A stretch of 64,000 nucleotides of DNA from IMG/VR virus record IMGVR_UViG_3300033997_000092, positions 1-64,000 of that record; one strand, written 5' to 3'. The stretch's first letter is position 1, and each line of letters begins with the position of its first letter. Shown in pieces: positions 2,813 through 60,200 of the stretch. Below the pieces are notes generated by a model. That model did not search any database and was not told the origin of the DNA. It saw only the letters and a program-made list of their open reading frames with translations. The translations under genes were made by a program, and so were the position numbers.

Positions 2813-3202
2813 ATGACTTACTTAAATGATGTGATTGGTTTGTTCTTGCTGTACCAGTTTTACGTGTATGCAATTGTTGCTGGATTCGTATCAGCATTCT
2901 TACGTGGCTTCCAGAACAAGAACGTGGCAGCCAACATGAAAACACTGTCGTTCGGCACAGGCTGGTTGATGGGTGTTAGCGATGTTGCTATCATGGCACT
3001 TGTTGGGCATGCTGGTGTTGTTATTGGACTGTTCTCTGGCTTTGGTCTTGGTGTAGGTTACGTTGTGTCAATTATCGTACACAAACGCCTAACACGCCGT
3101 GCTGATAAAGCACGTAAACAGAAAAAGCGTTCGCGTCTTGATGCAAAAATCGAAGACATGGTCCACAGAATCTTAGATGAACGGGAGACACCAAATGGCT
3201 GA
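2813..3202 (+). CDS. small multi-TM membrane protein, paralog of 16819..17079
   Basis: Three to four hydrophobic segments, FLRGFQNKNV motif and a basic C-terminus. Confidence 0.75.
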   Translation: MTYLNDVIGLFLLYQFYVYAIVAGFVSAFLRGFQNKNVAANMKTLSFGTGWLMGVSDVAIMALVGHAGVVIGLFSGFGLGVGYVVSIIVHKRLTRRADKARKQKKRSRLDAKIEDMVHRILDERETPNG

Positions 3203-6854: not shown

Positions 6855-7208
6855 ATGCTTCGGTTACAACAGCAACTAGATATGGACTACAGGAAATGTT
6901 CATGTGGTGCCAAACTGGAACGTGTTGTTATTAGCCAACAACACACGAACGGTCTGTGGAACGAAAAGCAGGAATTCAAATGCGGACGCATTGATGTGTT
7001 TGTTCCCAACTTCCAGGATTTGGTTCCGTGCAAACCTGACTCGACACCGTGCCCGAAAAGCCCAGAAGAAGCAGAGCGTTTAGCTGTTGAACAAAGGCAA
7101 TTGGAAGATGCTCAGACTCAGCTTGAGCGCGATTATCCTCACTTAGGTCCTGTACTTGCAGCAAGTATAGCCAAAACGATTTTAAAAGCAAAGAAGGAAA
7201 AGCAATGA
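6855..7208 (+). CDS. hypothetical Cys-containing protein
   Basis: AAGGAG RBS; CSC...C...C...C pattern. Confidence 0.7.
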   Translation: MLRLQQQLDMDYRKCSCGAKLERVVISQQHTNGLWNEKQEFKCGRIDVFVPNFQDLVPCKPDSTPCPKSPEEAERLAVEQRQLEDAQTQLERDYPHLGPVLAASIAKTILKAKKEKQ

Positions 7209-7690
7209 ACTCTTTTGATTCATCCAAAGCAGCGCGTATTAACCAAATCCGTGATAGCCAGAACAAACTCAAGCGGAGACTGTTTGTAGAACTGGCAGTG
7301 TTCGTTCTAATGGCCGAAGATGAAAACGCTACTAATAGTACAGTAGTGCGGTTACCTCAAATTGAAATGGCTCCACAACTGGAACACGATGTTGCTGGTG
7401 GTAAACTTGTGTTGAGCATAGGAAGTAATGCCTGTCCTGTATTGCGTTTCACCGAAAGCAACGGCCAAGTGTTTATCGAAGGCGGCATCACTAAAGGCGG
7501 TGTACCCTGTTCGTTTAGATTTCCACTGGATTACGTTATTTGTGTGCGCGATCCAGACTCTGGTGAAATTGCTGCGTTTGAGCATTTGATGAATGTTCGT
7601 TTTTCTCAGGACTATCAAGAAGCACAAGCGAACTTCGAGCAGTCCACAGCAAACACCAAAAAGAAACCTCACCTGACAGTAGTAAAATAA
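7205..7690 (+). CDS. sspB: SspB-like ClpXP protease specificity-enhancing factor
   Basis: Core LVLSIG...GGVPCSFRFPLDYVICVRDPDSG resembles SspB IVLNI...GGIPRQVSVPLAAVLAIYARENG. The C-terminus KPHLTVVK matches the ClpX-binding tail RPALRVVK. Confidence 0.8.
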   Translation: MNSFDSSKAARINQIRDSQNKLKRRLFVELAVFVLMAEDENATNSTVVRLPQIEMAPQLEHDVAGGKLVLSIGSNACPVLRFTESNGQVFIEGGITKGGVPCSFRFPLDYVICVRDPDSGEIAAFEHLMNVRFSQDYQEAQANFEQSTANTKKKPHLTVVK

Positions 7691-7700
7691 GGAAGTAATT

Positions 7701-9770
7701 ATGAAGCAGCTTCAATTGTCGCCTGAAGGAAAAATGCACTGGGCTGAATATACACGCAACGCCTGTATTAAGATCGAAGACAATCCTGTCACAAACAGTA
7801 TGCCTACTTTCATTCCTGTTGAAGGCAAGAAAGATTTCTTCGGTATATTGGGTGCGTGTGGTATAACTCCTGACGGAAATAAAGCTCCTGCAGCTACAGC
7901 GGCGAAAGCACTAGAGACGGTTATAGCTAAAACGAAAGGCAAATATCCAGGCGTAGCGACATTGCCTTTTCTAGTCTGGGTTACTTCAGGTGGCGGTGAC
8001 GTCCAACAAAAAGCCAGTATGTATACTGTGCTAAATAAAGCACTGGTCGACACATACATGCCTACTCTGATCAATAGGCTTGCTTTGCCTGAAAACAGAG
8101 AAGACTTTTTGGAAACACTGGAATCCATCAGAGCGGTTGATTCTGCGGCTGTTGACAACGGTGAGGCGGCTTTCGAGCGTGACAATTCATTCCCTTGGTC
8201 ACGAGGAAGACAGTGTGATTTGATTTGGCGCAATAGAACGATTGGTTTAATATCTGACCTGTTGCGTGACTGTACGATAACGGTTAAAGATAGCACTATC
8301 CATCCTTCTACAGAAAATGTGATTGCTGAAAACACATTCATGTTTCTGATGTACTTGGCTATCACTGTGGGTCTGGTGCCTCAACTCGTTGCCTACGCAC
8401 TTACTAATCTAGGTATGCAACGCTACTTACCGAATTTGATAAGCGGTCCATTACGTAAGCTTATGGAAGAACAGATGGTTTTGGTAGACGGCAAACTAAA
8501 CCCAATCATCTACCACTACATAGCCAACGTAATGTACGACAACAACGTGGTGATACGTTATCTACTCAGCGACAAACCAAGCGAAGGAGAGTACAGCCAA
8601 GCCTTGTATCATCTGAAATTGATTGGTAAGAGTATAGATGAACGCCTTGATGCAGTATGTGATGGCAAAACAATTCTGTCTGTATTTGGATTCGACACTG
8701 ATATAGGTACCGAAGTTCCTTCCACAGTAATGCGTATGGAAGAATTCTATGTCAAAGACAGTTTGAATTCCACTGTATCACAAATGAACAACTATATCTC
8801 CTTAGATAAGTTGAACAAAATCGCTACCATCAAGGCAATCTTGGCTCCGTTCCAAGAAGCGCAGATGTCTAGTGCCTTGCGTGTGAAATACTCACGTGGT
8901 ATTAAACTGGTGCTGGCTGACATTATCGAATGTGCCGAAACACTGAACAGCACTCAGGTCCACGTCCAATCGTTGGTAGAAGCACTGTCGATTGCCTCAA
9001 TCACTGAGATGGTCCAGAAACTGGCGGACATTGATAAGAATGTCGATGTCCAAATCCAAGCATTGGATATGTTAGTCAAAGAAGCATTATGGGCAAACGA
9101 AGAAGCCAATGACGTAACTTTGCAACAGGAGCCAGTTGCTGCCAAATCCGAAAGTGAACTTGTTGCAATGTATGAAGATGAAATTCATACTCTAACAGGT
9201 CGTGTGCAGGACTTAACTACACAACTGCAAGATGCACAGCAGAAGTTACAGAAAGCAGGCCAGTTGATTGCCGAACAGCCTACACAAGTAGCTCCTGTTG
9301 TTAAGTGTGACCACAACCTGTTACAACGTGCGTTGAGCGACGACCTGCGTCTGTCAGAAATTCCTGATATTGTCAAAGCTTACTTTAGCCATGTTGTGTT
9401 TTTGCCAGGCAGCACCGACGAGTTGAAGAACTCCATCTACAAGAAGCCTGCTAAAGTATTGGAAGCACTGATTCGTTTGTGTGGTCCGTACTACGAAACA
9501 TTGATGTCAGGTAAGCCTGACTCAGTAGCAATGGAAATCATGGGCAATCTGTACCGTGCTAACGAAAGCGGCTTGACTATGGGTACTCCTGATTTGCGCC
9601 GTCTGCGTGAATTTGAAGTAAACGGCAAACGTGTGGAGTTTGAACAACATTTGGATATTGGTACACGTCACGGCGATGCGTATTGTATGCAAGTACACTT
9701 CCGTATTATCGAAGGTGTTCTTTACATAGGCCGTATGGGCGGTCACCTGCCTGTAAGCAAATTGCGTTAA
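7701..9770 (+). CDS. large protein with a coiled coil and a putative RelE/ParE-like C-terminal domain
   Basis: 689 aa; heptad region near aa 480-525; C-terminal HLDIG...QVHF...YIGRMGGHL. Confidence 0.6.
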   Translation: MKQLQLSPEGKMHWAEYTRNACIKIEDNPVTNSMPTFIPVEGKKDFFGILGACGITPDGNKAPAATAAKALETVIAKTKGKYPGVATLPFLVWVTSGGGDVQQKASMYTVLNKALVDTYMPTLINRLALPENREDFLETLESIRAVDSAAVDNGEAAFERDNSFPWSRGRQCDLIWRNRTIGLISDLLRDCTITVKDSTIHPSTENVIAENTFMFLMYLAITVGLVPQLVAYALTNLGMQRYLPNLISGPLRKLMEEQMVLVDGKLNPIIYHYIANVMYDNNVVIRYLLSDKPSEGEYSQALYHLKLIGKSIDERLDAVCDGKTILSVFGFDTDIGTEVPSTVMRMEEFYVKDSLNSTVSQMNNYISLDKLNKIATIKAILAPFQEAQMSSALRVKYSRGIKLVLADIIECAETLNSTQVHVQSLVEALSIASITEMVQKLADIDKNVDVQIQALDMLVKEALWANEEANDVTLQQEPVAAKSESELVAMYEDEIHTLTGRVQDLTTQLQDAQQKLQKAGQLIAEQPTQVAPVVKCDHNLLQRALSDDLRLSEIPDIVKAYFSHVVFLPGSTDELKNSIYKKPAKVLEALIRLCGPYYETLMSGKPDSVAMEIMGNLYRANESGLTMGTPDLRRLREFEVNGKRVEFEQHLDIGTRHGDAYCMQVHFRIIEGVLYIGRMGGHLPVSKLR

Positions 9771-9778
9771 TCCTTACT

Positions 9779-9808
9779 GGGTAGAGGGCAAGCGTTCTCT
9801 ACCCTTTA
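9779..9808 (+). terminator. hairpin, possible intrinsic terminator
   Basis: GGGTAGAGGGC-AAGC-GTTCTCTACCC followed by a short TTT. Confidence 0.5.
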
Positions 9809-12562: not shown

Positions 12563-13273
12563 ATGAAAGTAATGCAGTGGATTGAGAAAAACAACTCTAA
12601 GTTTATGCGTTCGGTTATTGTACTGGCGTTACTGTTAACTGTTGGCGTATGGGCACACGTACTGATTACGTTGGACGGAATCAAACAAAGCTTTGAAGAA
12701 TTAAAGACGTCACAGGTATCGTATGTAACTGACACCGAACAGAACTTACCTGAAGTAGCATCTATGCAAATAGATTCAATCGACCAGAAGCTGGCTACTA
12801 ACGAAGGTGATGAACGTGTTACTAAGCACGGGCTTGATACGATGTCACCAGAACAATTGGACAGGCTTGTAGAAATTTACGCATACGCTGATCGTGTTAG
12901 TGAATATGGATTGACATTGACAGCTATTGCGTGGAAAGAAAGCAGAGGCTCGCGTTATCCTGTAAACTTGGACGACCCGTCGTGTGGTCCATTTCACACA
13001 AAAGTTAGCAACGTCCTAACACGCGAAAAGATTGAAGTGACACCGTTCAACAAAAACGTAGTGTGTGCTAAACTGATGCGGGACTTACCTTTCGCTGTGA
13101 AACACGCAAACATGGAACTCAATGTGTGGCGTACAAAGCACAAAGGTAACTGGCGCAAGATGGTCGAGTCCTACAACTCAGGACACGGCAAAAACAAATC
13201 TTATGCAGAAGATATTGCGGAGATTGTAGATATTCTCCGTACGTCCAACATAGATCGTTTATCTGAATTGTGA
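12563..13273 (+). CDS. membrane-anchored lytic transglycosylase (SLT/lysozyme-like)
   Basis: N-terminal TM helix, catalytic AIAWKES motif and C-terminal SYNSG (AYNAG-like) motif. Confidence 0.75.
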   Translation: MKVMQWIEKNNSKFMRSVIVLALLLTVGVWAHVLITLDGIKQSFEELKTSQVSYVTDTEQNLPEVASMQIDSIDQKLATNEGDERVTKHGLDTMSPEQLDRLVEIYAYADRVSEYGLTLTAIAWKESRGSRYPVNLDDPSCGPFHTKVSNVLTREKIEVTPFNKNVVCAKLMRDLPFAVKHANMELNVWRTKHKGNWRKMVESYNSGHGKNKSYAEDIAEIVDILRTSNIDRLSEL

Positions 13274-15291: not shown

Positions 15292-16299
15292 TTGGAGTTG
15301 TGTATGTTGAATACAATGCGTGGTTTAGGTACCTATATCTTAGATGCTTATGTGGCTGCTCAGCGTAGCCACGTGACTCGTAAGAAAATGGGTAGTGTGA
15401 TGGTCGGCCGCCGTGCAGATACAAACGTATGGCATATTATTGCCGACGGTTGCAACGGCGTTCCTCCTGGAAGTGACCACGACTTCGAGCGTGACGGTGT
15501 TACATTGCCTACAGTAATCCATTCTGAAAAGAACGTGATTACTAAGATCCACAGCATAAGTGAAGGCATAGATACGAAAGCTTTTGTACAGCAATTCGAT
15601 TTGTTTGTACTGATTGTAATGTCCAGCCCATGCGCGTCATGTGCAAACTCTATCATCGGTAGCTTCGGCCCCGAAGGCAGTTCTGCGATAAAGCTGGACG
15701 CTGTGGTCTATCTGGAATCTTACCGTGATCAAACAGGTGTACAACACTTGTTGAACGCAGGTATCAAATGCCATAAAATCACTACCGAAGAAATAGAGCA
15801 CCTGGTCCATGTTAGCCAGAATGTGACATTCGAGCTTCAGGTAGCTGCGTTAATTGGCAACAAGCTGCTGGAATCTATCTGTTCATTGACAATCTCCACG
15901 CGTATGGAAAATGAAGCGGAGTTTGAACGTAACCTGATTGACTTTGCGGCATATATGAATGATGAATTCATGGTACTTCGTGCTGAAGGCCTGGACAGAT
16001 TACGTAGTGTTCGCTATGGTCTTTTATCTGTAGGCGAAAACATGCGTACTCTTGTCGAAGGTATTCGGGTTCACAACATGAGCGTAGAAGGTTCCAATCT
16101 GGAAGACTTCGCCTCTATTGTTGATCGTGGTCCAGGCCAAACAGGTGATGCTCCGAAGTTCAATCGTGTATTTGACTTCAGTACAGGTAAAGTCGGTGTG
16201 AGTGTTGGCTTACTTCAAAATGAAGCCACGAAATCCTGGCGTCCTTACATAGTGGCGTTCCGCGGTAAATCTTTTGAGTTTGCTGAACATCTAAACTAA
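15292..16299 (+). CDS. dCMP deaminase with a C-terminal extension
   Basis: Zn-deaminase motifs IHSEKN and SPCASCA; GCNG; about 160 extra aa. Confidence 0.8.
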   Translation: MELCMLNTMRGLGTYILDAYVAAQRSHVTRKKMGSVMVGRRADTNVWHIIADGCNGVPPGSDHDFERDGVTLPTVIHSEKNVITKIHSISEGIDTKAFVQQFDLFVLIVMSSPCASCANSIIGSFGPEGSSAIKLDAVVYLESYRDQTGVQHLLNAGIKCHKITTEEIEHLVHVSQNVTFELQVAALIGNKLLESICSLTISTRMENEAEFERNLIDFAAYMNDEFMVLRAEGLDRLRSVRYGLLSVGENMRTLVEGIRVHNMSVEGSNLEDFASIVDRGPGQTGDAPKFNRVFDFSTGKVGVSVGLLQNEATKSWRPYIVAFRGKSFEFAEHLN

Positions 16300-32458: not shown

Positions 32459-32779
32459 CACAAATACAATTCCTATCTTTTTACTTGGTCTAGCTGTAGA
32501 TATAAGCGTTACTTTGTCCTTGTCTACGTGGACAGCAAACTTCTCCATATCCTCATTAAACTTCTGCTTTACAATAGGACCAAGCAATTCAACTACTTTC
32601 TTGTAGATACGTAATTCACGTATATCCAGAGACTCTAGTTGTTGCTTGGCACTTTTAGGAACCTTAGCTCCTCGCCTAATATCGTCTGCCACTAAAACAC
32701 TTTGTCCAAAGAAGCGTTTTGATACTTCCCAGTACAACTGGAATAAACGCAGATGTCTTGCCTTCAGATAAATCTTCAT
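32447..32779 (-). CDS. hypothetical protein
   Basis: 110 aa; coupled to the upstream gene. Confidence 0.65.
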   Translation of the reverse strand: MKIYLKARHLRLFQLYWEVSKRFFGQSVLVADDIRRGAKVPKSAKQQLESLDIRELRIYKKVVELLGPIVKQKFNEDMEKFAVHVDKDKVTLISTARPSKKIGIVFVKAP

Positions 32780-33099
32780 ATAAAACTTCCTGTCTTATCA
32801 TCAGACACAGAGTATTGCATGTTTATGCCGTCAGGTCCACACGAATTTAATAGGCCTTCCCTGAATGAAGAACCATACATCAGGTTTAACTGCTCAGGTA
32901 CAACAACGCGCAGACAATGCAGTGTTATTGATTCCCGGACTGATTTGTCACGTGGACAAACATCGATGATCAATGTGCTAAGAAATCCAGTTGAAGCAGT
33001 TGGAGCAAACTCTGCTTTGAGTTCACCCGCTGCTAACTTACTGAATATAGGAAGGCACATTAGCTTATCAGTGACATTGATATAGTTCTGTCCCCACAT
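32776..33099 (-). CDS. hypothetical protein
   Basis: 107-aa ORF in the minus-strand operon. Confidence 0.55.
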   Translation of the reverse strand: MWGQNYINVTDKLMCLPIFSKLAAGELKAEFAPTASTGFLSTLIIDVCPRDKSVRESITLHCLRVVVPEQLNLMYGSSFREGLLNSCGPDGINMQYSVSDDKTGSFI

Positions 33100-33112
33100 A
33101 CATGCTCCCGTA

Positions 33113-48347: not shown

Positions 48348-49058
48348 TTAAGAACCAAATCCACCTTTCAACCAAGCACGTATGTCATCTTTGGTAACAG
48401 CAAAATAACTACGCAACTCTACGTTAAGGTCTATTGTCATTGGATTACCAGTCTCATGCTCAGGCTGAGAAGACACAGCGGCGGTAACACTTGTTACAAT
48501 GCACGGAGTCATCCGGAACCATTTACCGAGCTGACAAACTATCAATTGGTCTTCATTGATTGGAATATCAATGCCCATTTGACTTGCCACTTCAGCTATA
48601 GGCACAGGACCAGGAGGAACAAGTACACCAGCGGGTGATAAGTCAGGAGTAACAAACAACGATATGTCTTCCAATTTTTGAATAACTTCGTCCTTTGTGC
48701 TACGTAAAGCAATCAAGTGTATAGGAAGGCTTAACTCAAGATAAGCTGGGCCTTCCCACATTTGAGCGCTAAGCATCTTCATCTTAGATGATGCACCAGC
48801 AGCACCAGCAGCACGTTCAAGCATGGCGCCCTGTTGGCCAGCAACAGTTTCAGCTACAGACATAGTGGGAAACATAGGTCCCCACTGTGACTGCAATGTT
48901 ATCTGAAAGTCAGCAGGAACATATCCCTGAAACGATAAGCTACCAGATTGGTTGTATATGTGGGTCTTATGAATGGCATCTACATGGATACCACTAGACT
49001 GTTGAGGACTAGCGGCAGGAACTGTAATACCTGATACATTACGTTTCAAATAGTTCAT
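48348..49058 (-). CDS. baseplate tail-tube cap/initiator-like protein
   Basis: Position after the tape measure; tube-fold-like pattern (CIVTSVT...P..IDLNVEL). Confidence 0.55.
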   Translation of the reverse strand: MNYLKRNVSGITVPAASPQQSSGIHVDAIHKTHIYNQSGSLSFQGYVPADFQITLQSQWGPMFPTMSVAETVAGQQGAMLERAAGAAGASSKMKMLSAQMWEGPAYLELSLPIHLIALRSTKDEVIQKLEDISLFVTPDLSPAGVLVPPGPVPIAEVASQMGIDIPINEDQLIVCQLGKWFRMTPCIVTSVTAAVSSQPEHETGNPMTIDLNVELRSYFAVTKDDIRAWLKGGFGS

Positions 49059-51463
49059 TACACTTGTCCCAGATTTAATAACTGAAGTACAGGGTCATCA
49101 ATATGCAGAGGAACCGTAGCCAGTGTAGGCTTGGTACTAGCTGCAACTTGATTAGAGCGTTCCTGTGCTTTACCTTGATGTCCGTGAACAACTTTAGCAG
49201 TCGCTTTTGGTTTCGATTCTTTTGGTTTCGATCCCGCTGCAACAGCAGCTTCCAGACGAGAAGTAGCAGCGTCACGGTCTTCCTGCTCATATACATAAAC
49301 AGGACTGCGTGGCACTATTATCTGGTCTGAGTCTTGCCCTTCGCGATACATCTTATCGAATTCAGCATCAGAGTAACGAGGACCTGAGCCATATTCAACT
49401 GTGCTGGAGGTTTCAGTAATCTTTTTCTTAGGAGGATTACTTGCTGTGTTTGGTATACCAGGATTAACTGTTGGTTTGGGAGCAGGAGAGTCGGAGTCAC
49501 GGCTAAACTTGTTGAACATAGAGGAAAAGAATCCTCCACCTTCTTCAACTTCACGCTCGGTAGTATCTATCATCTTAGTGATGCGTTCGGTTGAATCAAG
49601 TTGACTATCTTGAATCTCCCTAGATACTTCTCCAAGTTCTTCCTGTTGATCTGCTCCAAACTTAAAGAAGTTTTCAATGGAGTTTTGTGTAGTGGTAGAA
49701 TCATCTAACACATCAGCACCCACATCGTAAATCTTTTCAGCAGCTTTCTCACCAAGATCAGCAAGACCTAATTCTTCAGCAGCAAAATATCCTGCAACGC
49801 TACCAAGCAATCCACCTATAGCCGTACCGACCAGTGGAACTACACTTCCTATAGCTGCCCCAGCTGCGGCACCTGCCAATGCTCCAGATTGTTTTCCTGC
49901 AAATCTGCCTAATAAACCAGCAGTGCCTTTATCACGCTCTTCCTCTGTAGCGTATTCTTGTTCACGCTGGGCAACAACGTCTTGATACAAAAACACACTA
50001 TCTAAGGCTGAACCAACAAGGCCACCAGCACGTACAGACTTTAAGCCGCCTAATTTTGAATCAACAGGTAGCTTAGTTTTAACATCAGGTGTTACCGTAG
50101 GCTTTATACCAGGAGCCGCTGCGTTGGGAGCAGAAACAGTATCAGGTACAGCAGGAGTACTGGGTGACATTACTTTAGCAGCAGCGTAGCCAGCTCCAGC
50201 TAGGCCTGCTGTAGCAAGCAATGTTCCTGTTGTTAGAAATGAAGAATCTTCCTCAACAGGTTCAGCTTTAGCTTTTTGTTGTGCCAGTTTACGTTCGCGG
50301 CTTTCAAGTCTGATTTGACCTAAACGCTTTTCATCGTAATCATCTTCGGATAATGCCTCTAGTCTCTCACGCTCAACACGGATTTCATCTTCTTCAGCAG
50401 CAATCTGTTCAGGACTTAAAGTGTTCCCGCCAAACGCACCGGATAAACCCCCCATACCATACTTAGTAAGAGCGCTATCAGCGATAAGAGCTCCTGTACC
50501 AGCGAGTAATGTGCCGCCTGCGATAGTAGCTAAGTTGTCACGTATGCCATTGTACACCCAACCAGCAGCACGTCCAAATTTACCGCCTGCTTTTGCTTTT
50601 GGTGCGTCAGAAGTATTGTCAGGAAAGTCTGCATCTATACGTGTAGGAAGATTGATTTCATCTACAACAGTCGGTAAATTCATACGACGAGAAGGTTTAG
50701 CATCTACGTCGGGACCAACTGTGCGTTTACGTTGTTTACCGTATTCGCGTACATCAGCATTAGTTTCTTTCTTAGGCTTACGGCGCTGCTCTGCTTCAGG
50801 CTCTACAGTGCGTTTACGTCTGCGGCTAGGAATATCGTCGTCAACATCAGGCATACGTCTTGACGAACGACGGCGTTTAGCATCAACATCAGTGTCACCT
50901 TTGCCCTTACCACGGCGGCGCTTCTTGCGTTTGCCAGGCATATCGAAGCCAATAAGATCATCGAGGAGTCCTAGTAAACCATCGCCCATGTCAGTTTGTT
51001 GGTTCAACAGGTTCTGCTGGTTTGCTTTGCTTTGGATAGCCATGTTGGCTTCTTTACGCAACGCATCTTTCCTACGTTGTTTCTCGGCTGCCTTGTACTG
51101 CTTGTCCAAAACATCGTACATGCTCTCAAGTAATTCAGTTTGTTTTTCTGATTGTGCATGTATAGCAAGTAATCCGCCTTCAAGCATATCCAAGTCGATG
51201 TCAACAATTTCCTTGTCATCATCTGATTTAGATACAGTAACATTTATCTCTGGAGGCAGACCAGCATCGACTTCAATAGCGGGTTTATACTCACCCTGAC
51301 GCCGATTGATCATGTCTGTACCAGGAGTAACTACATCAACAAGTTCCTGCATATCATCATGTAGGAGTTCTGCTTGATCTAGCATAGCGCCGAAGAAATC
51401 GATAGAGTTATCCAACAAGTCATGGACATTACTATCGATTTGCGTGAGTTGGATTTCCATCAA
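49058..51463 (-). CDS. tape measure protein
   Basis: 801 aa, coiled-coil, Gly/Ala-rich hydrophobic zippers; lies between chaperones and baseplate genes. Confidence 0.7.
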   Translation of the reverse strand: MMEIQLTQIDSNVHDLLDNSIDFFGAMLDQAELLHDDMQELVDVVTPGTDMINRRQGEYKPAIEVDAGLPPEINVTVSKSDDDKEIVDIDLDMLEGGLLAIHAQSEKQTELLESMYDVLDKQYKAAEKQRRKDALRKEANMAIQSKANQQNLLNQQTDMGDGLLGLLDDLIGFDMPGKRKKRRRGKGKGDTDVDAKRRRSSRRMPDVDDDIPSRRRKRTVEPEAEQRRKPKKETNADVREYGKQRKRTVGPDVDAKPSRRMNLPTVVDEINLPTRIDADFPDNTSDAPKAKAGGKFGRAAGWVYNGIRDNLATIAGGTLLAGTGALIADSALTKYGMGGLSGAFGGNTLSPEQIAAEEDEIRVERERLEALSEDDYDEKRLGQIRLESRERKLAQQKAKAEPVEEDSSFLTTGTLLATAGLAGAGYAAAKVMSPSTPAVPDTVSAPNAAAPGIKPTVTPDVKTKLPVDSKLGGLKSVRAGGLVGSALDSVFLYQDVVAQREQEYATEEERDKGTAGLLGRFAGKQSGALAGAAAGAAIGSVVPLVGTAIGGLLGSVAGYFAAEELGLADLGEKAAEKIYDVGADVLDDSTTTQNSIENFFKFGADQQEELGEVSREIQDSQLDSTERITKMIDTTEREVEEGGGFFSSMFNKFSRDSDSPAPKPTVNPGIPNTASNPPKKKITETSSTVEYGSGPRYSDAEFDKMYREGQDSDQIIVPRSPVYVYEQEDRDAATSRLEAAVAAGSKPKESKPKATAKVVHGHQGKAQERSNQVAASTKPTLATVPLHIDDPVLQLLNLGQV

Positions 51464-55852: not shown

Positions 55853-57475
55853 TTAACTGCGATCAACTAAACTTTCAGCAAAACGGATAGCACCACGTTT
55901 AGGAACAATCGCGTTAAGATGAATACGTTTCGTGTACCGTGTTGGATCGAGGAACACGTCACACACCAGGTCACCATTAGCAACCCATTCGTTTGGATTG
56001 TTGCGGCTGTCGCACACAACGTCATACCAATCCAGACCACGGTCAACACGGATAGGCTCAAGCATATCACGCATCTGACGGTTAATCTGAGACTGAAGGA
56101 AACTGTCGTTCGGCTGGAACACAGAAGACAGTTGACCGAAACGTACAATACGATGCAGTATTGCTAACAAGCGGCGCACACCGATGTCGTTCAGTGGAGA
56201 CTCAACACCGTACAGTGTATCTGCGTTCCAAATCACGTTACCATAGCCGCTCATGTTGCGGATATAGTTGATTTGGTTCTCAGTCAGTGCATTGCGGTCA
56301 CCTTGATCGTAGTCATAGCCAAGTGCTTCAACACCGGACAACACACCACGATTTGTACCAGCAGGAGCAAACCAAGATTTGGCTACACGGTCTGTACGTG
56401 CAAACACACCACCAACTTTACCACTCGGAGGAACAAAGTAACTGCGAGAGTTATCATCATCAAACAGTTTGAGATAAGGAGCATACAATGCAGCCGTAGA
56501 GCTGTTCATGTTCAATGTGTTACGACGGAAGTTGATTGCACGGTCAGGACGTACTAAGTTTTCTGGTAAGTCCAACACAGCTATACAGTCAAGGCGATTA
56601 GCAGCAATCTCATTGATTTTGTGCAGTATTGCCTCATTGGTATAGCCAGCACTCATTAAGATGTCCACGTCTACTTCTTCGTAGTCACGGTACAGGTCCC
56701 ACGCACGGAGATAGTCACCGATTGTTGGGTCAACACCGTTATCACCACCGAAGAACTGGCCGTTGTTAACACCAGTAAGAGCATCAGAAGGACCACCAAT
56801 GATTGCATTAATCAACACAGGCTCGTCAGTCTGTTGGAACTCAGGATGGTTCCAGTTGAAACGTACACGAATGCGGTCACTGAAAGTATTAACCACATCT
56901 TCTACGAATAACTGTTTACCGTCTTCTGATTTTTTGTAGAAAGTAGTACAGGCATACTTCTCAACAGGTACGCTTGAATCGCCTTCATACACTTCGATAA
57001 AAAACTGCTGGTAGTCTGGATCGTTTACATCTGGGTACATCACTACGTACAGGTCATCGCCCCACTTGCCGGGATTCTCTGCACTGATTAACATGATGTC
57101 GTTACCAGTTAAAGCAGCTTGTGCTGGGTCAGTCATACCTTGTGCCAGTTTAATAGGCGCACAGAAATTGCTTACTGTACGAATCATAATACCAGCGAAC
57201 TTGGCATCCCGAGCAACACGGGTATAGAACAGGCTGTTACTTTCCGTCAGGAAATGCTCAGCACAGTGAATACCGTAGCTTGTCTTTGGATCTTTTTTAC
57301 CGAACAGCGACTTCAATCGTCCAGTGTCAGTTAATTTCACACGTTGCATGACAGGACCGCGATGGCTAGCAGCACAAATTACACCTGTTGATACAGAGAA
57401 TGTACGCTGGCCTACGGCACGATCAATTTCACTTGTGTAAACACCTGCACTGGGATTATTAGGCCGTATGGACAT
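55853..57475 (-). CDS. tail sheath protein
   Basis: PSAGVYTSEID, WFAPAGTNRG, VRRLL, VVCDSRNN motifs. Confidence 0.95.
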   Translation of the reverse strand: MSIRPNNPSAGVYTSEIDRAVGQRTFSVSTGVICAASHRGPVMQRVKLTDTGRLKSLFGKKDPKTSYGIHCAEHFLTESNSLFYTRVARDAKFAGIMIRTVSNFCAPIKLAQGMTDPAQAALTGNDIMLISAENPGKWGDDLYVVMYPDVNDPDYQQFFIEVYEGDSSVPVEKYACTTFYKKSEDGKQLFVEDVVNTFSDRIRVRFNWNHPEFQQTDEPVLINAIIGGPSDALTGVNNGQFFGGDNGVDPTIGDYLRAWDLYRDYEEVDVDILMSAGYTNEAILHKINEIAANRLDCIAVLDLPENLVRPDRAINFRRNTLNMNSSTAALYAPYLKLFDDDNSRSYFVPPSGKVGGVFARTDRVAKSWFAPAGTNRGVLSGVEALGYDYDQGDRNALTENQINYIRNMSGYGNVIWNADTLYGVESPLNDIGVRRLLAILHRIVRFGQLSSVFQPNDSFLQSQINRQMRDMLEPIRVDRGLDWYDVVCDSRNNPNEWVANGDLVCDVFLDPTRYTKRIHLNAIVPKRGAIRFAESLVDRS

Positions 57476-59058: not shown

Positions 59059-60156
59059 TTAACGCTTGGCTTTTGCTACTGAGCGTGGGTTGGCCAGAAC
59101 GAAAGACATGATTTCGTTCAGTAACCAGCCCTTAGTAGTTTCACCCTGATTCTCGCCAGAAGTCGGACGAGAAGTGATACCACCACGCACGTTCATTACA
59201 CCGTGGTTCTCACGGTCAGAAACAACATAGATGTCACCACGATCCAGAACACGTTGGTTCTCAGGACGGTAACCGTCTGTCATCAGTTCCAGGCCGTACA
59301 GTGTACCAACTTTACCAGTCATTACCAGTTCATACTGGGCAACTGGAGTCAGAGCATCAGCCCACTGAGGTTCAGCGATGATGTCTTCCCAGAAGTTGTT
59401 GGCGATCAGAGCTTTAGTAGCCGGCAGGTTCCAGTCAGTAACCTGAGTACGCAGTGCACCGATAACAGCAGGAGTTAAACGGCCTGAAATCAGAGTGATG
59501 TTGTTAGCAACACCGACAGTCATATCAGCAGCACGTTTCCAAATGCGGTCGCGGCCAGTAACCATTGCTTCCAGAGCTTGACCGTAAGCGTGGTCCAGCA
59601 AATCGTGAGTAGCCTGACCCAGGTCTAACTCAGATACACGGACGTTTGCTTTCAGTTCAAATTCCTGAGGGAAGAAGTAACGGTCTTTGATCAGCTGGTA
59701 ACCCATTTGAGTCGGGCTAGTAGCCACAACAGCTTGAACATCGTGACGAGGCATTGGCACACGTGGCGCTTCACCTTGACGCAGTTCGTTGATCATTACC
59801 AGGCTTGACATGAAGCCTTGACGGGTTTGCTGTTCACGGACGTCTTCAGAAATGGTAGCACCTAAAGATGCCCACAAATCAGCGTCAGCGTGTGCCGCTT
59901 GCAGAATGTCGCGCTTATCAGCGTTTGACATTGAAGCGAAAGTTTTCTGACCTTCGTTAACAGCAACAATTTGACCGCTGGCTAAAGCCATCATCAAAGC
60001 TTGTTGTTGTTGCAACAGGTCTTTAAAACCAGAAGCGTTGATTTCACCAGTTGAGCTGCTAAGGGCTTTCATACCCTGACCAGGCAACACCAGATCCGCT
60101 AAATCGCCGCCGTTGGCCAGACGAAATGTTACACCCTGCTTAGGTAAGTTCTTCAT
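59059..60156 (-). CDS. major capsid protein (HK97 fold)
   Basis: About 365 aa, strongly biased codon use, HK97-like pattern (FELKANVRVS..., GKVGTLYGLELMTD); ATG at 60156. Confidence 0.85.
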   Translation of the reverse strand: MKNLPKQGVTFRLANGGDLADLVLPGQGMKALSSSTGEINASGFKDLLQQQQALMMALASGQIVAVNEGQKTFASMSNADKRDILQAAHADADLWASLGATISEDVREQQTRQGFMSSLVMINELRQGEAPRVPMPRHDVQAVVATSPTQMGYQLIKDRYFFPQEFELKANVRVSELDLGQATHDLLDHAYGQALEAMVTGRDRIWKRAADMTVGVANNITLISGRLTPAVIGALRTQVTDWNLPATKALIANNFWEDIIAEPQWADALTPVAQYELVMTGKVGTLYGLELMTDGYRPENQRVLDRGDIYVVSDRENHGVMNVRGGITSRPTSGENQGETTKGWLLNEIMSFVLANPRSVAKAKR

Positions 60157-60200
60157 ACCTTGTATCTCCAAAATTGTTCAACCGAGAACTCAGCGCCTAA

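What the first reader, a model, noticed from the sequence alone, without database searches (positions are those of the whole stretch)
7205..7690. Phage-encoded SspB-like ClpXP adaptor with an intact ClpX-docking tail
Seen: an SspB-like core and C-terminal KKKPHLTVVK. Established: SspB binds ssrA-tagged and RseA substrates and tethers them to the ClpX N-domain through its LRVVK tail. The N-terminal region and the substrate groove look divergent. Inference: the phage redirects host ClpXP to new substrates (defence proteins, regulators, antitoxins) or competes with host adaptors.
Basis: partly seen in the sequence, partly recalled or inferred. Interest (0 to 1): 0.65.

Follow-up and report, generated by a model that had tools for sequence, protein, structure and literature searches.

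The report
Divergent phage SspB-like ClpX-docking protein
An uncultivated jumbo phage encodes a strongly diverged relative of the bacterial SspB adaptor that keeps the short tail used to dock on the host ClpX unfoldase but has lost most of the residues that cellular SspBs conserve, so it probably hijacks or blocks host ClpXP; phage SspB-like genes are already annotated elsewhere, though I found no study that tested one.

Summary
Window 7205-7690 (+) is a real 161-aa gene (dN/dS 0.06) in a 261-kb jumbo phage and ends in KKKPHLTVVK.

It is a true but remote SspB homolog:
- Profile-profile probability is 97.7% (E 1.4e-12).
- The AlphaFold model covers all 106 residues of the SspB substrate-binding domain (Z 13.3).
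- An independent single-sequence Atlas model agrees.

It fails Pfam and NCBIfam SspB thresholds. It keeps only 9 of 27 core positions conserved in cellular SspBs.

The tail is the most conserved segment of the 13-member, phage-only family. It matches the cellular ClpX-binding consensus except for Thr in place of Arg/Lys after the Leu. RAY gp39 and phiKZ gp232 have the same Thr.

Phage SspB-like genes are already annotated in 78 phage records and PHROG 8945, so the concept is not new. I found no functional study of one.

Most likely the protein docks on the host ClpX N-domain, then either delivers a non-ssrA cargo or blocks host adaptors. Binding itself is untested.

Verdict: new variant of a known kind, moderate interest.

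The parts
7193..7199 (+). Ribosome-binding site GAAGGAA, 5 nt upstream of the ATG
   Evidence: Read directly from the sequence.
7205..7690 (+). SspB-like gene, 161 codons plus TAA stop
   Evidence: ORF list and sequence. dN/dS 0.06 against L139. 13-member family.
7205..7600 (+). SspB-type substrate-binding-domain fold, residues 1-132: N-terminal helix 3-21 followed by a beta-sandwich. It has insertions relative to cellular SspB (about residues 37-47 and 85-88).
   Evidence: AlphaFold2 model pLDDT 81.6, core above 90. Z 13.3, rmsd 2.7 A, 106/106 residues of 1ou8_A. Foldseek top 19 hits are all SspB. The Atlas's own model gives TM 0.56/0.64 to the SspB cluster. hhalign 97.7%.
7601..7657 (+). Variable low-confidence linker, residues 133-151
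   Evidence: pLDDT about 55. Highest column entropy and most gaps in the family. Core-to-tail spacing is 31 residues here, 19-31 in the family and 30-67 in cellular SspBs.
7658..7687 (+). C-terminal tail KKKPHLTVVK (residues 152-161), aligned with the cellular SspB ClpX-binding (XB) tail such as GGRPALRVVK
   Evidence: Alignments. L157 and V160 are invariant. Mean entropy of the last five residues is 0.58 bits against 2.07 in the linker. Cellular tails are listed.
6855..7208 (+). Upstream 117-aa Cys-rich ORF whose stop overlaps the SspB-like start (ATGA). It is conserved next to the SspB-like gene in the close relatives.
   Evidence: tblastn gives 97% (partial) identity in L139 and 66% in L140. 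No family hit.
7701..9770 (+). Downstream 689-aa ORF, 10 nt after the SspB-like stop and conserved in that position in the close relatives. Its C-terminal ~130 residues resemble PADLOC models NsnC and HEC-07.
   Evidence: 84% and 58% identity in L139 and L140. PADLOC NsnC E 1.1e-7 and HEC-07 E 4e-6.
9779..9804 (+). Terminator-like hairpin (11-bp stem) that would close the transcription unit
   Evidence: Consensus scan. This is a pattern match only.

Best explanation
The gene encodes a fast-evolved, phage-lineage member of the SspB superfamily. It has an SspB-type domain (N-terminal helix plus beta-sandwich), a short flexible linker, and a C-terminal XB-type peptide (KKKPHLTVVK).

By analogy with SspB, the tail docks on the zinc-binding N-domain of the host's ClpX. 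The phage encodes no ClpX or ClpP of its own. Because the sites that cellular SspBs conserve are mostly replaced, the folded domain most likely no longer holds the ssrA tag in the canonical way. Instead it would tether some other cargo (phage or host protein) to host ClpXP for degradation.

Any such tail-bearing protein made in quantity will also compete with host adaptors for the same docking site.

Shown: homology, fold, tail conservation, loss of the cellular conserved sites, purifying selection, phage-only distribution.

Inferred: ClpX docking (I put it at about 0.7), dimerisation, and delivery of a non-ssrA cargo.
For: - Homology to SspB: hhalign 94.6% against E. coli SspB alone and 97.7%, E 1.4e-12 against a 19-sequence cellular profile, with the alignment running into the tail. 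The reverse search with the family profile picks out the cellular sspB loci in 18 of 401 proteobacterial genomes (same coordinates as).
- Fold: Z 13.3 over all 106 residues of SspB structures, next unrelated hit Z 4.7. An alignment-free Atlas model agrees.
- Tail: the most conserved segment across members that are only 22-30% identical. No non-synonymous change against the 93% relative.
- Same tail architecture as cellular gamma/beta SspBs, [KR][KR]P-x-L-x-V-V-K at the extreme C-terminus. The tail resembles the published ZBD-binding consensus L-K-x-h at the Leu and the small hydrophobic position, but has Thr at the K position (PMC7226468).
- XB peptides recruit ClpXP even when fused to other proteins (PMC12373786).
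- Changed specificity: cellular SspB conservation is concentrated in the dimer interface and the ssrA groove (PMC9963277). Only 9 of 27 such positions are kept here, against 25-27 in pf16 and FLC4-3B phage SspBs.
- No ClpP or ClpX ZBD in the phage genome.
- The core is under strong purifying selection (dN/dS 0.044), which argues that the folded domain does something.
Against: - No binding data of any kind.
- The residue after the Leu is Thr, whereas all 19 sampled cellular SspBs have Arg/Lys and the published ZBD consensus has Lys there.
- The family's invariant residues are mostly hydrophobic or structural (F4, G66, L68, L70, A76, P78, L80, G93, F104, P107, F125), with only R25 and C77 polar. 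So there is no clear conserved polar ligand site, which fits a scaffold-only role as well as a cargo-binding one.
- The linker is short.
- The host is unknown (metagenomic phage), so its ClpX and ssrA tag cannot be inspected.
- The better AlphaFold model used an alignment containing cellular SspBs, which biases it towards that fold. The phage-only alignment gave pLDDT 41.
Confidence: 0.4

Rival explanations
1. Docking-site blocker. The protein binds the ClpX N-domain through its tails (as a dimer, for avidity) but carries no cargo. Its role would be to shut out host adaptors and N-domain-dependent substrates (SspB-ssrA, RssB-sigmaS and similar), which protects phage proteins from ClpXP or rewires host proteolysis.
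For: - SspB and the isolated XBR peptide competitively inhibit RssB-mediated sigmaS turnover (PMC7226468).
- The tail is the best-conserved part of the family, while the cellular groove and dimer positions are largely lost.
- Family-invariant residues are almost all structural.
- The short linker (19-31 residues) fits a role in which nothing needs to be positioned at the pore.
Against: - A peptide would be enough to block. Yet the whole 130-residue domain is kept under strong purifying selection (dN/dS 0.044 in the core) and across members only 22-30% identical.
- A blocker and an adaptor are not mutually exclusive.
Confidence: 0.3
2. Ordinary SspB function. The phage copy still binds the host's ssrA tag and boosts ClpXP clearance of tmRNA-tagged proteins during infection, for example to recycle amino acids or cope with ribosome stalling.
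For: - Same fold and same tail architecture.
- Some phage SspBs are nearly cellular in sequence: pf16 gp18 keeps 25/27 and FLC4-3B gp94 keeps 27/27 conserved positions, and both pass an NCBIfam equivalog cut-off. They probably do this.
- SspB orthologs can recognise tags through diverged grooves, as the alpha-type SspB shows. That point is from my own knowledge; the structures 2qas and 2qaz appear.
Against: - Only 9 of 27 cellular conserved core positions are kept. N54, F72, R75, F76, Y94, E97 and G101 are all replaced.
- There is no Pfam hit, and NCBIfam gives 17 bits against cut-offs of 135-198.
- The phage has no tmRNA of its own.
- The family forms a separate long-branched clade.
Confidence: 0.12
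3. SspB fold reused for something unrelated to ClpX, with the tail serving another partner or acting as a degron for the protein itself.
For: - The Thr variant of the tail is untested.
- The gene is tightly linked to two genes of unknown function in the close clade and to a phrog_600 gene in the distant clade, so it could work with those.
Against: - The tail matches the cellular XB pattern at L, V, V and K and in the preceding basic-Pro stretch, at the exact C-terminus, in every family member.
- The same tail is kept in independently annotated phage SspB-likes.
Confidence: 0.1

Closest known systems
Cellular gamma/beta-proteobacterial SspB (E. coli SspB; PDB 1ox9, 1ou8, 8et3; Pfam PF04386)
   Same: - Fold of the whole substrate-binding domain, including the N-terminal helix (Z 13.3, 106/106 residues).
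- Domain-linker-tail architecture.
- C-terminal basic-Pro-x-L-x-V-V-K tail at the extreme C-terminus.
   Different: - About 16-20% identity.
- Not detected by Pfam, and far below NCBIfam cut-offs.
- The invariant cellular N-terminal motif RPYLLRAxYEW..DN..TPH is absent.
- 18 of 27 conserved core positions are replaced.
- Thr instead of Arg/Lys after the tail Leu.
- The linker is about half the typical length and not acidic.
- Encoded by a phage, and not found as such in 401 bacterial genomes searched.
Erwinia phage RAY gp39 and relatives (Ea35-70 group), annotated 'putative SspB-like ClpXP adaptor'; PHROG 8945
   Same: - Jumbo-phage gene of about 150 aa.
- SspB-like domain and an identical last five residues, LTVVK.
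- The window protein hits PHROG 8945 weakly (E 1.6e-4) and matches gp39 by hhalign at 93%.
- gp39 is cytoplasmic during infection and its function is untested (PMC10299810).
   Different: - RAY gp39 is recognisable by tblastn with E. coli SspB (30% identity) and keeps 15/27 conserved positions, including Y94, E97, R75, F76 and N54.
- RAY is a nucleus-forming chimallivirus. The window's phage is related by capsid protein to the Lu11/PaBG/NCTB group.
- In the tree, gp39 falls with the cellular gamma/beta clade, not with this family (gp39 is a long branch, so this is uncertain).
phiKZ gp232 (PHIKZ232) and its homologs in Pseudomonas phiKZ-like phages
   Same: N-terminal SspB-like domain, and an L-T-V-I-K motif near the C-terminus preceded by Pro-Lys.
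   Different: - 302 aa with a roughly 170-residue extension.
- The motif is followed by GGKK rather than ending the protein.
- No function reported. It was only listed among shell-enriched candidates, most of which localised diffusely outside the shell (PMC10449902).
Near-cellular phage SspBs (Pseudomonas phage pf16 gp18, Ralstonia phage FLC4-3B gp94)
   Same: Phage-encoded, with short linkers and XB-type tails (RKKPTLRVVK and KGFLSVVK).
   Different: - They keep 25-27 of 27 conserved positions and pass an NCBIfam SspB cut-off.
- FLC4-3B gp94 is sister to a single cellular sequence (100/98), so it looks like a recent capture from a host.
- The window family is an old or fast-evolving separate clade.

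Membership tests
SspB (Pfam PF04386; NCBIfam 'ClpXP protease specificity-enhancing factor' equivalogs) | Sequence match above the curated family threshold | tested here: not met
   No Pfam SspB hit at E<=1 for the protein or in the six-frame genome search. The best NCBIfam hit is NF008764 at 17.3 bits against a cut-off of 191, and the other two SspB hits score 15.0 and 13.3 bits against cut-offs of 198 and 135.
SspB superfamily (remote homology) | Significant profile-profile similarity to the SspB substrate-binding domain | tested here: met
   hhalign gives 97.7%, E 1.4e-12 over 91 columns, and 94.6% against E. coli SspB alone. The family profile finds cellular sspB loci in the reverse direction.
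SspB superfamily | SspB fold: N-terminal helix packed on a small beta-sandwich | tested here: met
   Z 13.3, rmsd 2.7 A, all 106 residues of 1ou8_A, with a drop to Z 4.7 for non-SspB chains. The Atlas single-sequence model gives TM 0.56/0.64 to the SspB cluster. Caveat: my model's alignment included cellular SspBs.
SspB (gamma/beta type) | C-terminal ClpX-binding (XB) motif L-[RK]-[VI]-[VI]-K at the extreme C-terminus, preceded by a basic/Pro stretch | tested here: inconclusive
   The protein ends KKKPHLTVVK. L, V, V, K and the basic-Pro stretch match. The position after L is Thr, whereas it is R/K in 19/19 sampled cellular SspBs. Published mutational data for that position could not be retrieved.
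SspB (gamma/beta type) | Flexible linker between the domain and the tail | tested here: met
   Low-confidence, gap-rich, variable segment at residues 133-151. It is short: spacing 31 against a cellular median of 52 (range 30-67).
SspB (functional ssrA adaptor) | [quoted passage not shown] | tested here: not met
   9 of 27 positions that are at least 90% conserved are kept. N54S, F72G, R75T, F76K, Y94R, A95D, E97D and G101I are replaced, and the N-terminal W20/P28 motif is absent. Alignment of the first ~45 residues is uncertain.
SspB (functional adaptor) | Homodimer; binds the ClpX N-domain; binds ssrA or RseA peptide; lowers KM for ClpXP degradation | not testable with these tools
   These are biochemical properties and no usable computational verdict was obtained.
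Alpha-proteobacterial SspB (SspB-alpha) | Alpha-type tail (...VVSLDAFRKK) and clade membership | tested here: not met
   Alpha tails differ. The alpha clade is separated from the family at 100/100.
PHROG 8945 'stringent starvation protein SspB-like' | Match to the PHROG profile | tested here: met
   E 1.6e-4, 22.5 bits, residues 32-161 against profile positions 17-149 of 149. The match is weak.

The most novel reading that the evidence does not exclude
The protein is a natural phage 'degrader'. Its remodelled SspB domain grips a host defence or regulatory protein, or the co-transcribed 689-aa protein with a Menshen-NsnC-like C-terminal effector domain. The Thr-variant XB tail then hands that cargo to host ClpXP. 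The recurring L-T-V-V-K tail of phage SspB-likes (this family, RAY gp39, phiKZ gp232) would be a phage-specific tuning of ClpX docking.
Probability: 0.15. Interest if true: 0.75.

Novelty: new variant of a known kind. Interest (0 to 1): 0.4.

Why it matters
Phage-encoded SspB-like genes are widespread in jumbo phages, including phiKZ, the RAY/Ea35-70 group, pf16, Ralstonia and Xanthomonas phages, and several virus-rich metagenomic clusters. Yet in the literature I could search, none has a demonstrated function.

This family is an informative extreme. The ClpX-docking tail is kept almost unchanged while the sites that cellular SspBs conserve are mostly replaced. That is the pattern expected if the tail is the selected function and the cargo has changed or been dropped.

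A demonstration either way would show how large phages take over host proteolysis. It would also provide natural templates for ClpXP-recruiting degraders of the kind now being engineered from the XB peptide (PMC12373786).

Tried and rejected
- **Complex prediction.** I ran the tail (residues 126-161) with two copies of E. coli ClpX residues 1-61 plus zinc. It gave no verdict (score 0.07, mark 0.34, controls not run). This is neither support nor evidence against binding.
- **First AlphaFold run.** With only the four close homologs it gave pLDDT 41 and was not used for fold searches. Its secondary-structure order matched the later model.
- **Sequence searches of PDB.** Searches with the protein and with the 4-sequence profile found nothing meaningful.
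- **Phage record searches.** Megablast and tblastn against 50,697 phage records with the window region, the window protein and distant member P0008 gave no match. The divergent family is therefore not in cultured or deposited phages at BLAST sensitivity.
- **Deep profile search.** Over 1.84 billion representatives it gave only 7 hits, one of them a repeat artefact (P0009) that I discarded.
- **Picking SspB ORFs with phmmer.** Using E. coli SspB this worked poorly, so I chose ORFs by position and strand instead. L131 was dropped as mis-stranded.
- **Published mutational data on the XB tail.** Thibault 2006, Park 2007 and Wah 2003 were not held, so the effect of R/K to T is unknown to me.
- **Promoter scan.** It found fewer sigma-70-like sites than in shuffles, so no promoter is claimed.
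- **Read laying.** Not used. The RNA-labelled holders are wastewater metagenome contigs, which cannot show expression.
- **PADLOC.** No hit for the SspB-like protein itself.

Full report
**What is there**

Window 7205-7690 (+) is an ATG-to-TAA ORF of 161 codons that ends ...NTKKKPHLTVVK.
- A GAAGGAA ribosome-binding site lies 5 nt upstream.
- The ATG overlaps the stop of the preceding 117-codon ORF (ATGA).
- The next ORF (689 codons) starts 10 nt after the stop.
- A strong terminator-like hairpin follows that ORF at 9779-9804.

The window is the first 64 kb of a 261,032-bp virus record with direct terminal repeats.
- It carries a tail sheath, major head protein and tape-measure-like genes.
- Its capsid protein is 45-51% identical to those of Lu11, PaBG, NCTB and the Erwinia/Dickeya jumbo myoviruses.
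- Near-identical DNA occurs in subsurface (probably the source), wastewater and biofilm metagenomes from several studies.
- The host is unknown.

**Is it a real gene?**

Yes. A relative on another contig is 93% identical in protein and 88.6% in DNA. It gives dS 0.55, dN 0.034 and dN/dS 0.06, with no non-synonymous change in the last ten codons. Two further relatives at about 60% identity and nine at 22-30% begin at the same Met and end with the same kind of tail.

**Is it SspB-like?**

Standard family models say no.
- Pfam PF04386 does not hit the protein or the genome.
- Its only NCBIfam hits are three SspB equivalog models, at 13-17 bits against cut-offs of 135-198.
- PHROG 8945 ('SspB-like') hits weakly (E 1.6e-4).

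Remote-homology and structural tests say yes.
- The 9-sequence family profile matches E. coli SspB at 94.6%.
- The 13-sequence profile matches a profile of 19 diverse gamma/beta-proteobacterial SspBs, taken from reference genomes, at 97.7%, E 1.4e-12. That alignment runs from residue 64 to the last residue.
- In the reverse direction, the family profile picks out weak matches in 18 of 401 proteobacterial genomes. All five hits in genomes shared with the Pfam search lie at the sspB loci found there. It finds no family-level match in any of the 401.
- An AlphaFold2 model built on the combined alignment has pLDDT 81.6, above 90 across most of residues 11-30 and 51-120.
- Its top 19 Foldseek hits are all SspB structures.
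- Realignment gives Z 13.3, rmsd 2.7 A, over all 106 residues of the SspB substrate-binding domain, N-terminal helix included. The next unrelated chain scores Z 4.7.
- That alignment contained cellular SspBs, so the model is biased. The independent check is the ESM Atlas's own single-sequence model of this exact protein (pTM 0.65). It matches the bacterial SspB cluster over residues 1-130 at TM 0.56/0.64.

**The tail**

Sampled cellular gamma/beta SspBs end in [GK][RK]P-x-L-[RK]-[VIR]-[VI]-K. Examples are GGRPALRVVK, KKKPTLRVVK and KRPHLRVVK. The window protein ends KKKPHLTVVK.

Across the phage family the last five residues are the most conserved part of the protein.
- Mean column entropy is 0.58 bits, against 1.49 in the core and 2.07 in the linker.
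- L157 and V160 are invariant.

Such a C-terminus occurs once among 1,769 open frames of the phage genome, with 0.3 expected. The motif alone is therefore weak evidence. The motif on an SspB core, conserved through deep divergence, is strong evidence of a selected function.

The one systematic difference is the residue after the Leu.
- It is Arg/Lys in 19 of 19 cellular sequences.
- It is Thr or Ser in 12 of 13 family members.
- The published consensus for ClpX zinc-binding-domain ligands is L-K-x-h (PMC7226468).
- I could not retrieve mutational data for this position.
- The same Thr occurs in RAY gp39 (...KKPTLTVVK) and phiKZ gp232 (...PKLTVIKGGKK). Ralstonia phage FLC4-3B has Ser.

**What has changed**

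Cellular SspB conservation is concentrated in the dimer interface and the ssrA groove (PMC9963277). I counted how many of the 27 core positions that are at least 90% conserved in the 19 cellular sequences survive in each phage protein:

| Protein | Positions kept (of 27) |
|---|---|
| FLC4-3B gp94 | 27 |
| pf16 gp18 | 25 |
| RAY gp39 | 15 |
| Window protein | 9 |

- The window protein has replaced N54, F72, R75, F76, Y94, A95, E97 and G101.
- The RPYLLRAxYEW..DN..TPH N-terminal motif is absent, although alignment of the first ~45 residues is uncertain.
- The family's own invariant residues (F4, R25, G66, L68, L70, A76, C77, P78, L80, G93, F104, P107, F125) are mostly structural.
- Core-to-tail spacing is 19-31 residues (31 here), against 30-67 in cellular SspBs. 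The linker is also not acidic.

**Evolution and distribution**

In a maximum-likelihood tree:
- The family is one group (94/91).
- It is sister to a clade (97/91) holding the cellular gamma/beta SspBs and all three annotated phage SspBs.
- Both are separated from alpha-type SspBs at 100/100.
- The annotated phage copies nest among cellular ones at separate places. FLC4-3B gp94 pairs with one cellular sequence at 100/98.
- Long branches make the deep placement uncertain.

All family members with context sit in phage-like runs of small unannotated ORFs, one of them on a 286-kb contig. The phage has no ClpP, no ClpX zinc-binding domain and no tmRNA.

**What is already known**

E. coli SspB finds homologs by tblastn in 78 deposited phage records. 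These are phiKZ-like Pseudomonas phages, the Ea35-70/RAY Erwinia group, pf16, and Ralstonia and Xanthomonas jumbo phages. Many are annotated 'SspB-like'.
- A comparative survey of jumbo phages mentions phage ClpP, ClpS and ClpX, and 'SspB' does not occur in its text (PMC7824862).
- I found no functional study of any phage SspB-like protein.
- The Atlas search shows several virus-rich clusters of 71-215 members near this protein, a minority of which carry Pfam SspB.

The kind is known and common. This family is its most diverged documented form.

**Mechanism**

The best-supported reading is a protein that docks on the host ClpX N-domain through its tail. I put docking at about 0.7. It may dimerise through the N-terminal helix as SspB does, but I did not test this. 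What follows from docking is open:
- Delivery of a non-ssrA cargo: 0.4. Strong purifying selection on the whole domain favours this.
- Pure blocking of the docking site: 0.3. The lack of conserved polar surface residues and the short linker favour this. Adaptor competition at this site is established (PMC7226468).
- Canonical ssrA delivery: 0.12.
- A ClpX-independent role: 0.1.

The complex prediction I ran gave no verdict and is listed only under things tried.

**Verdict**

This is a new variant of a known kind and of moderate interest.

Noticed in passing
window 7701-9770 (+): The 689-aa ORF directly downstream has a C-terminal ~130 residues matching PADLOC models NsnC (E 1.1e-7, profile 193-313 of 316) and HEC-07 (E 4e-6). 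NsnC is the effector of the Menshen antiphage system, and its C-terminal part is a polymorphic, mostly RNase-type effector domain (PMC12065111). The ORF stays next to the SspB-like gene in relatives at 93% and 59% identity (L139, L140). Its nearest Atlas clusters are bacterial 'hypothetical proteins'.
   Followed up: partly
window 6855-7208 (+): A 117-aa Cys-rich ORF (C15, C17, C43, C59, C66) whose stop overlaps the SspB-like start (ATGA). It is conserved in that position in L139 and L140, and present elsewhere in L004. It has no family hit.
   Followed up: partly
window 12563-13273 (+) and 2813-3202 (+); L003, L004, L141, L142: In the distant family members, the SspB-like gene lies next to, or one gene from, a homolog (41-55% identity) of window ORF 12563-13273 (phrog_600, weak SLT transglycosylase match). 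In L004 it is followed by a homolog of window ORF 2813-3202 (phrog_30210, holin-like phrog_7045). In the window these genes are about 5 kb away on either side.
   Followed up: partly
L136:2501-2953 (RAY gp39); L143:571-1479 (phiKZ gp232); L138:1501-1908 (FLC4-3B gp94): Phage SspB-likes repeatedly have Thr or Ser after the tail Leu (LTVVK, LTVIK, LSVVK), where all 19 sampled cellular SspBs have Arg/Lys. phiKZ gp232 is a 302-aa protein with an SspB-like N-domain, a long extension, and the motif followed by GGKK.
   Followed up: partly
L144:595-1134 (Xanthomonas phage RTH11); L145:553-1119 (LucasX): The Xanthomonas jumbo-phage SspB-likes end in ...DFRAPRKPKS and ...DFRARRKPSS. These resemble the alpha-type tail (...LDAFRKK) rather than L-x-V-V-K.
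   Followed up: no
L146 (Acinetobacter phage MD-2021a contig); hits H16/H17: Some 'phage' records with near-cellular sspB look like host DNA. The Acinetobacter record has sspB directly after sspA, as in bacterial chromosomes. One hit is a Salmonella enterica chromosome scaffold filed in the phage collection.
   Followed up: no
window 15292-16299 (+): A 335-aa ORF with a dCMP/cytidine deaminase zinc-binding domain (PF00383 E 2e-6; phrog_174 dCMP deaminase) and weak AID/APOBEC-like matches.
   Followed up: no
window about 32500-33100; genome C1:147711-147787: Gene orientation and GC skew switch sign near 32.5-33 kb. Upstream are + strand small accessory genes, and downstream are - strand structural genes: tail sheath 55853-57475, major head protein 59059-60171, tape-measure-like 49058-51463. 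The whole genome has a single tRNA-Met and no tmRNA.
   Followed up: no
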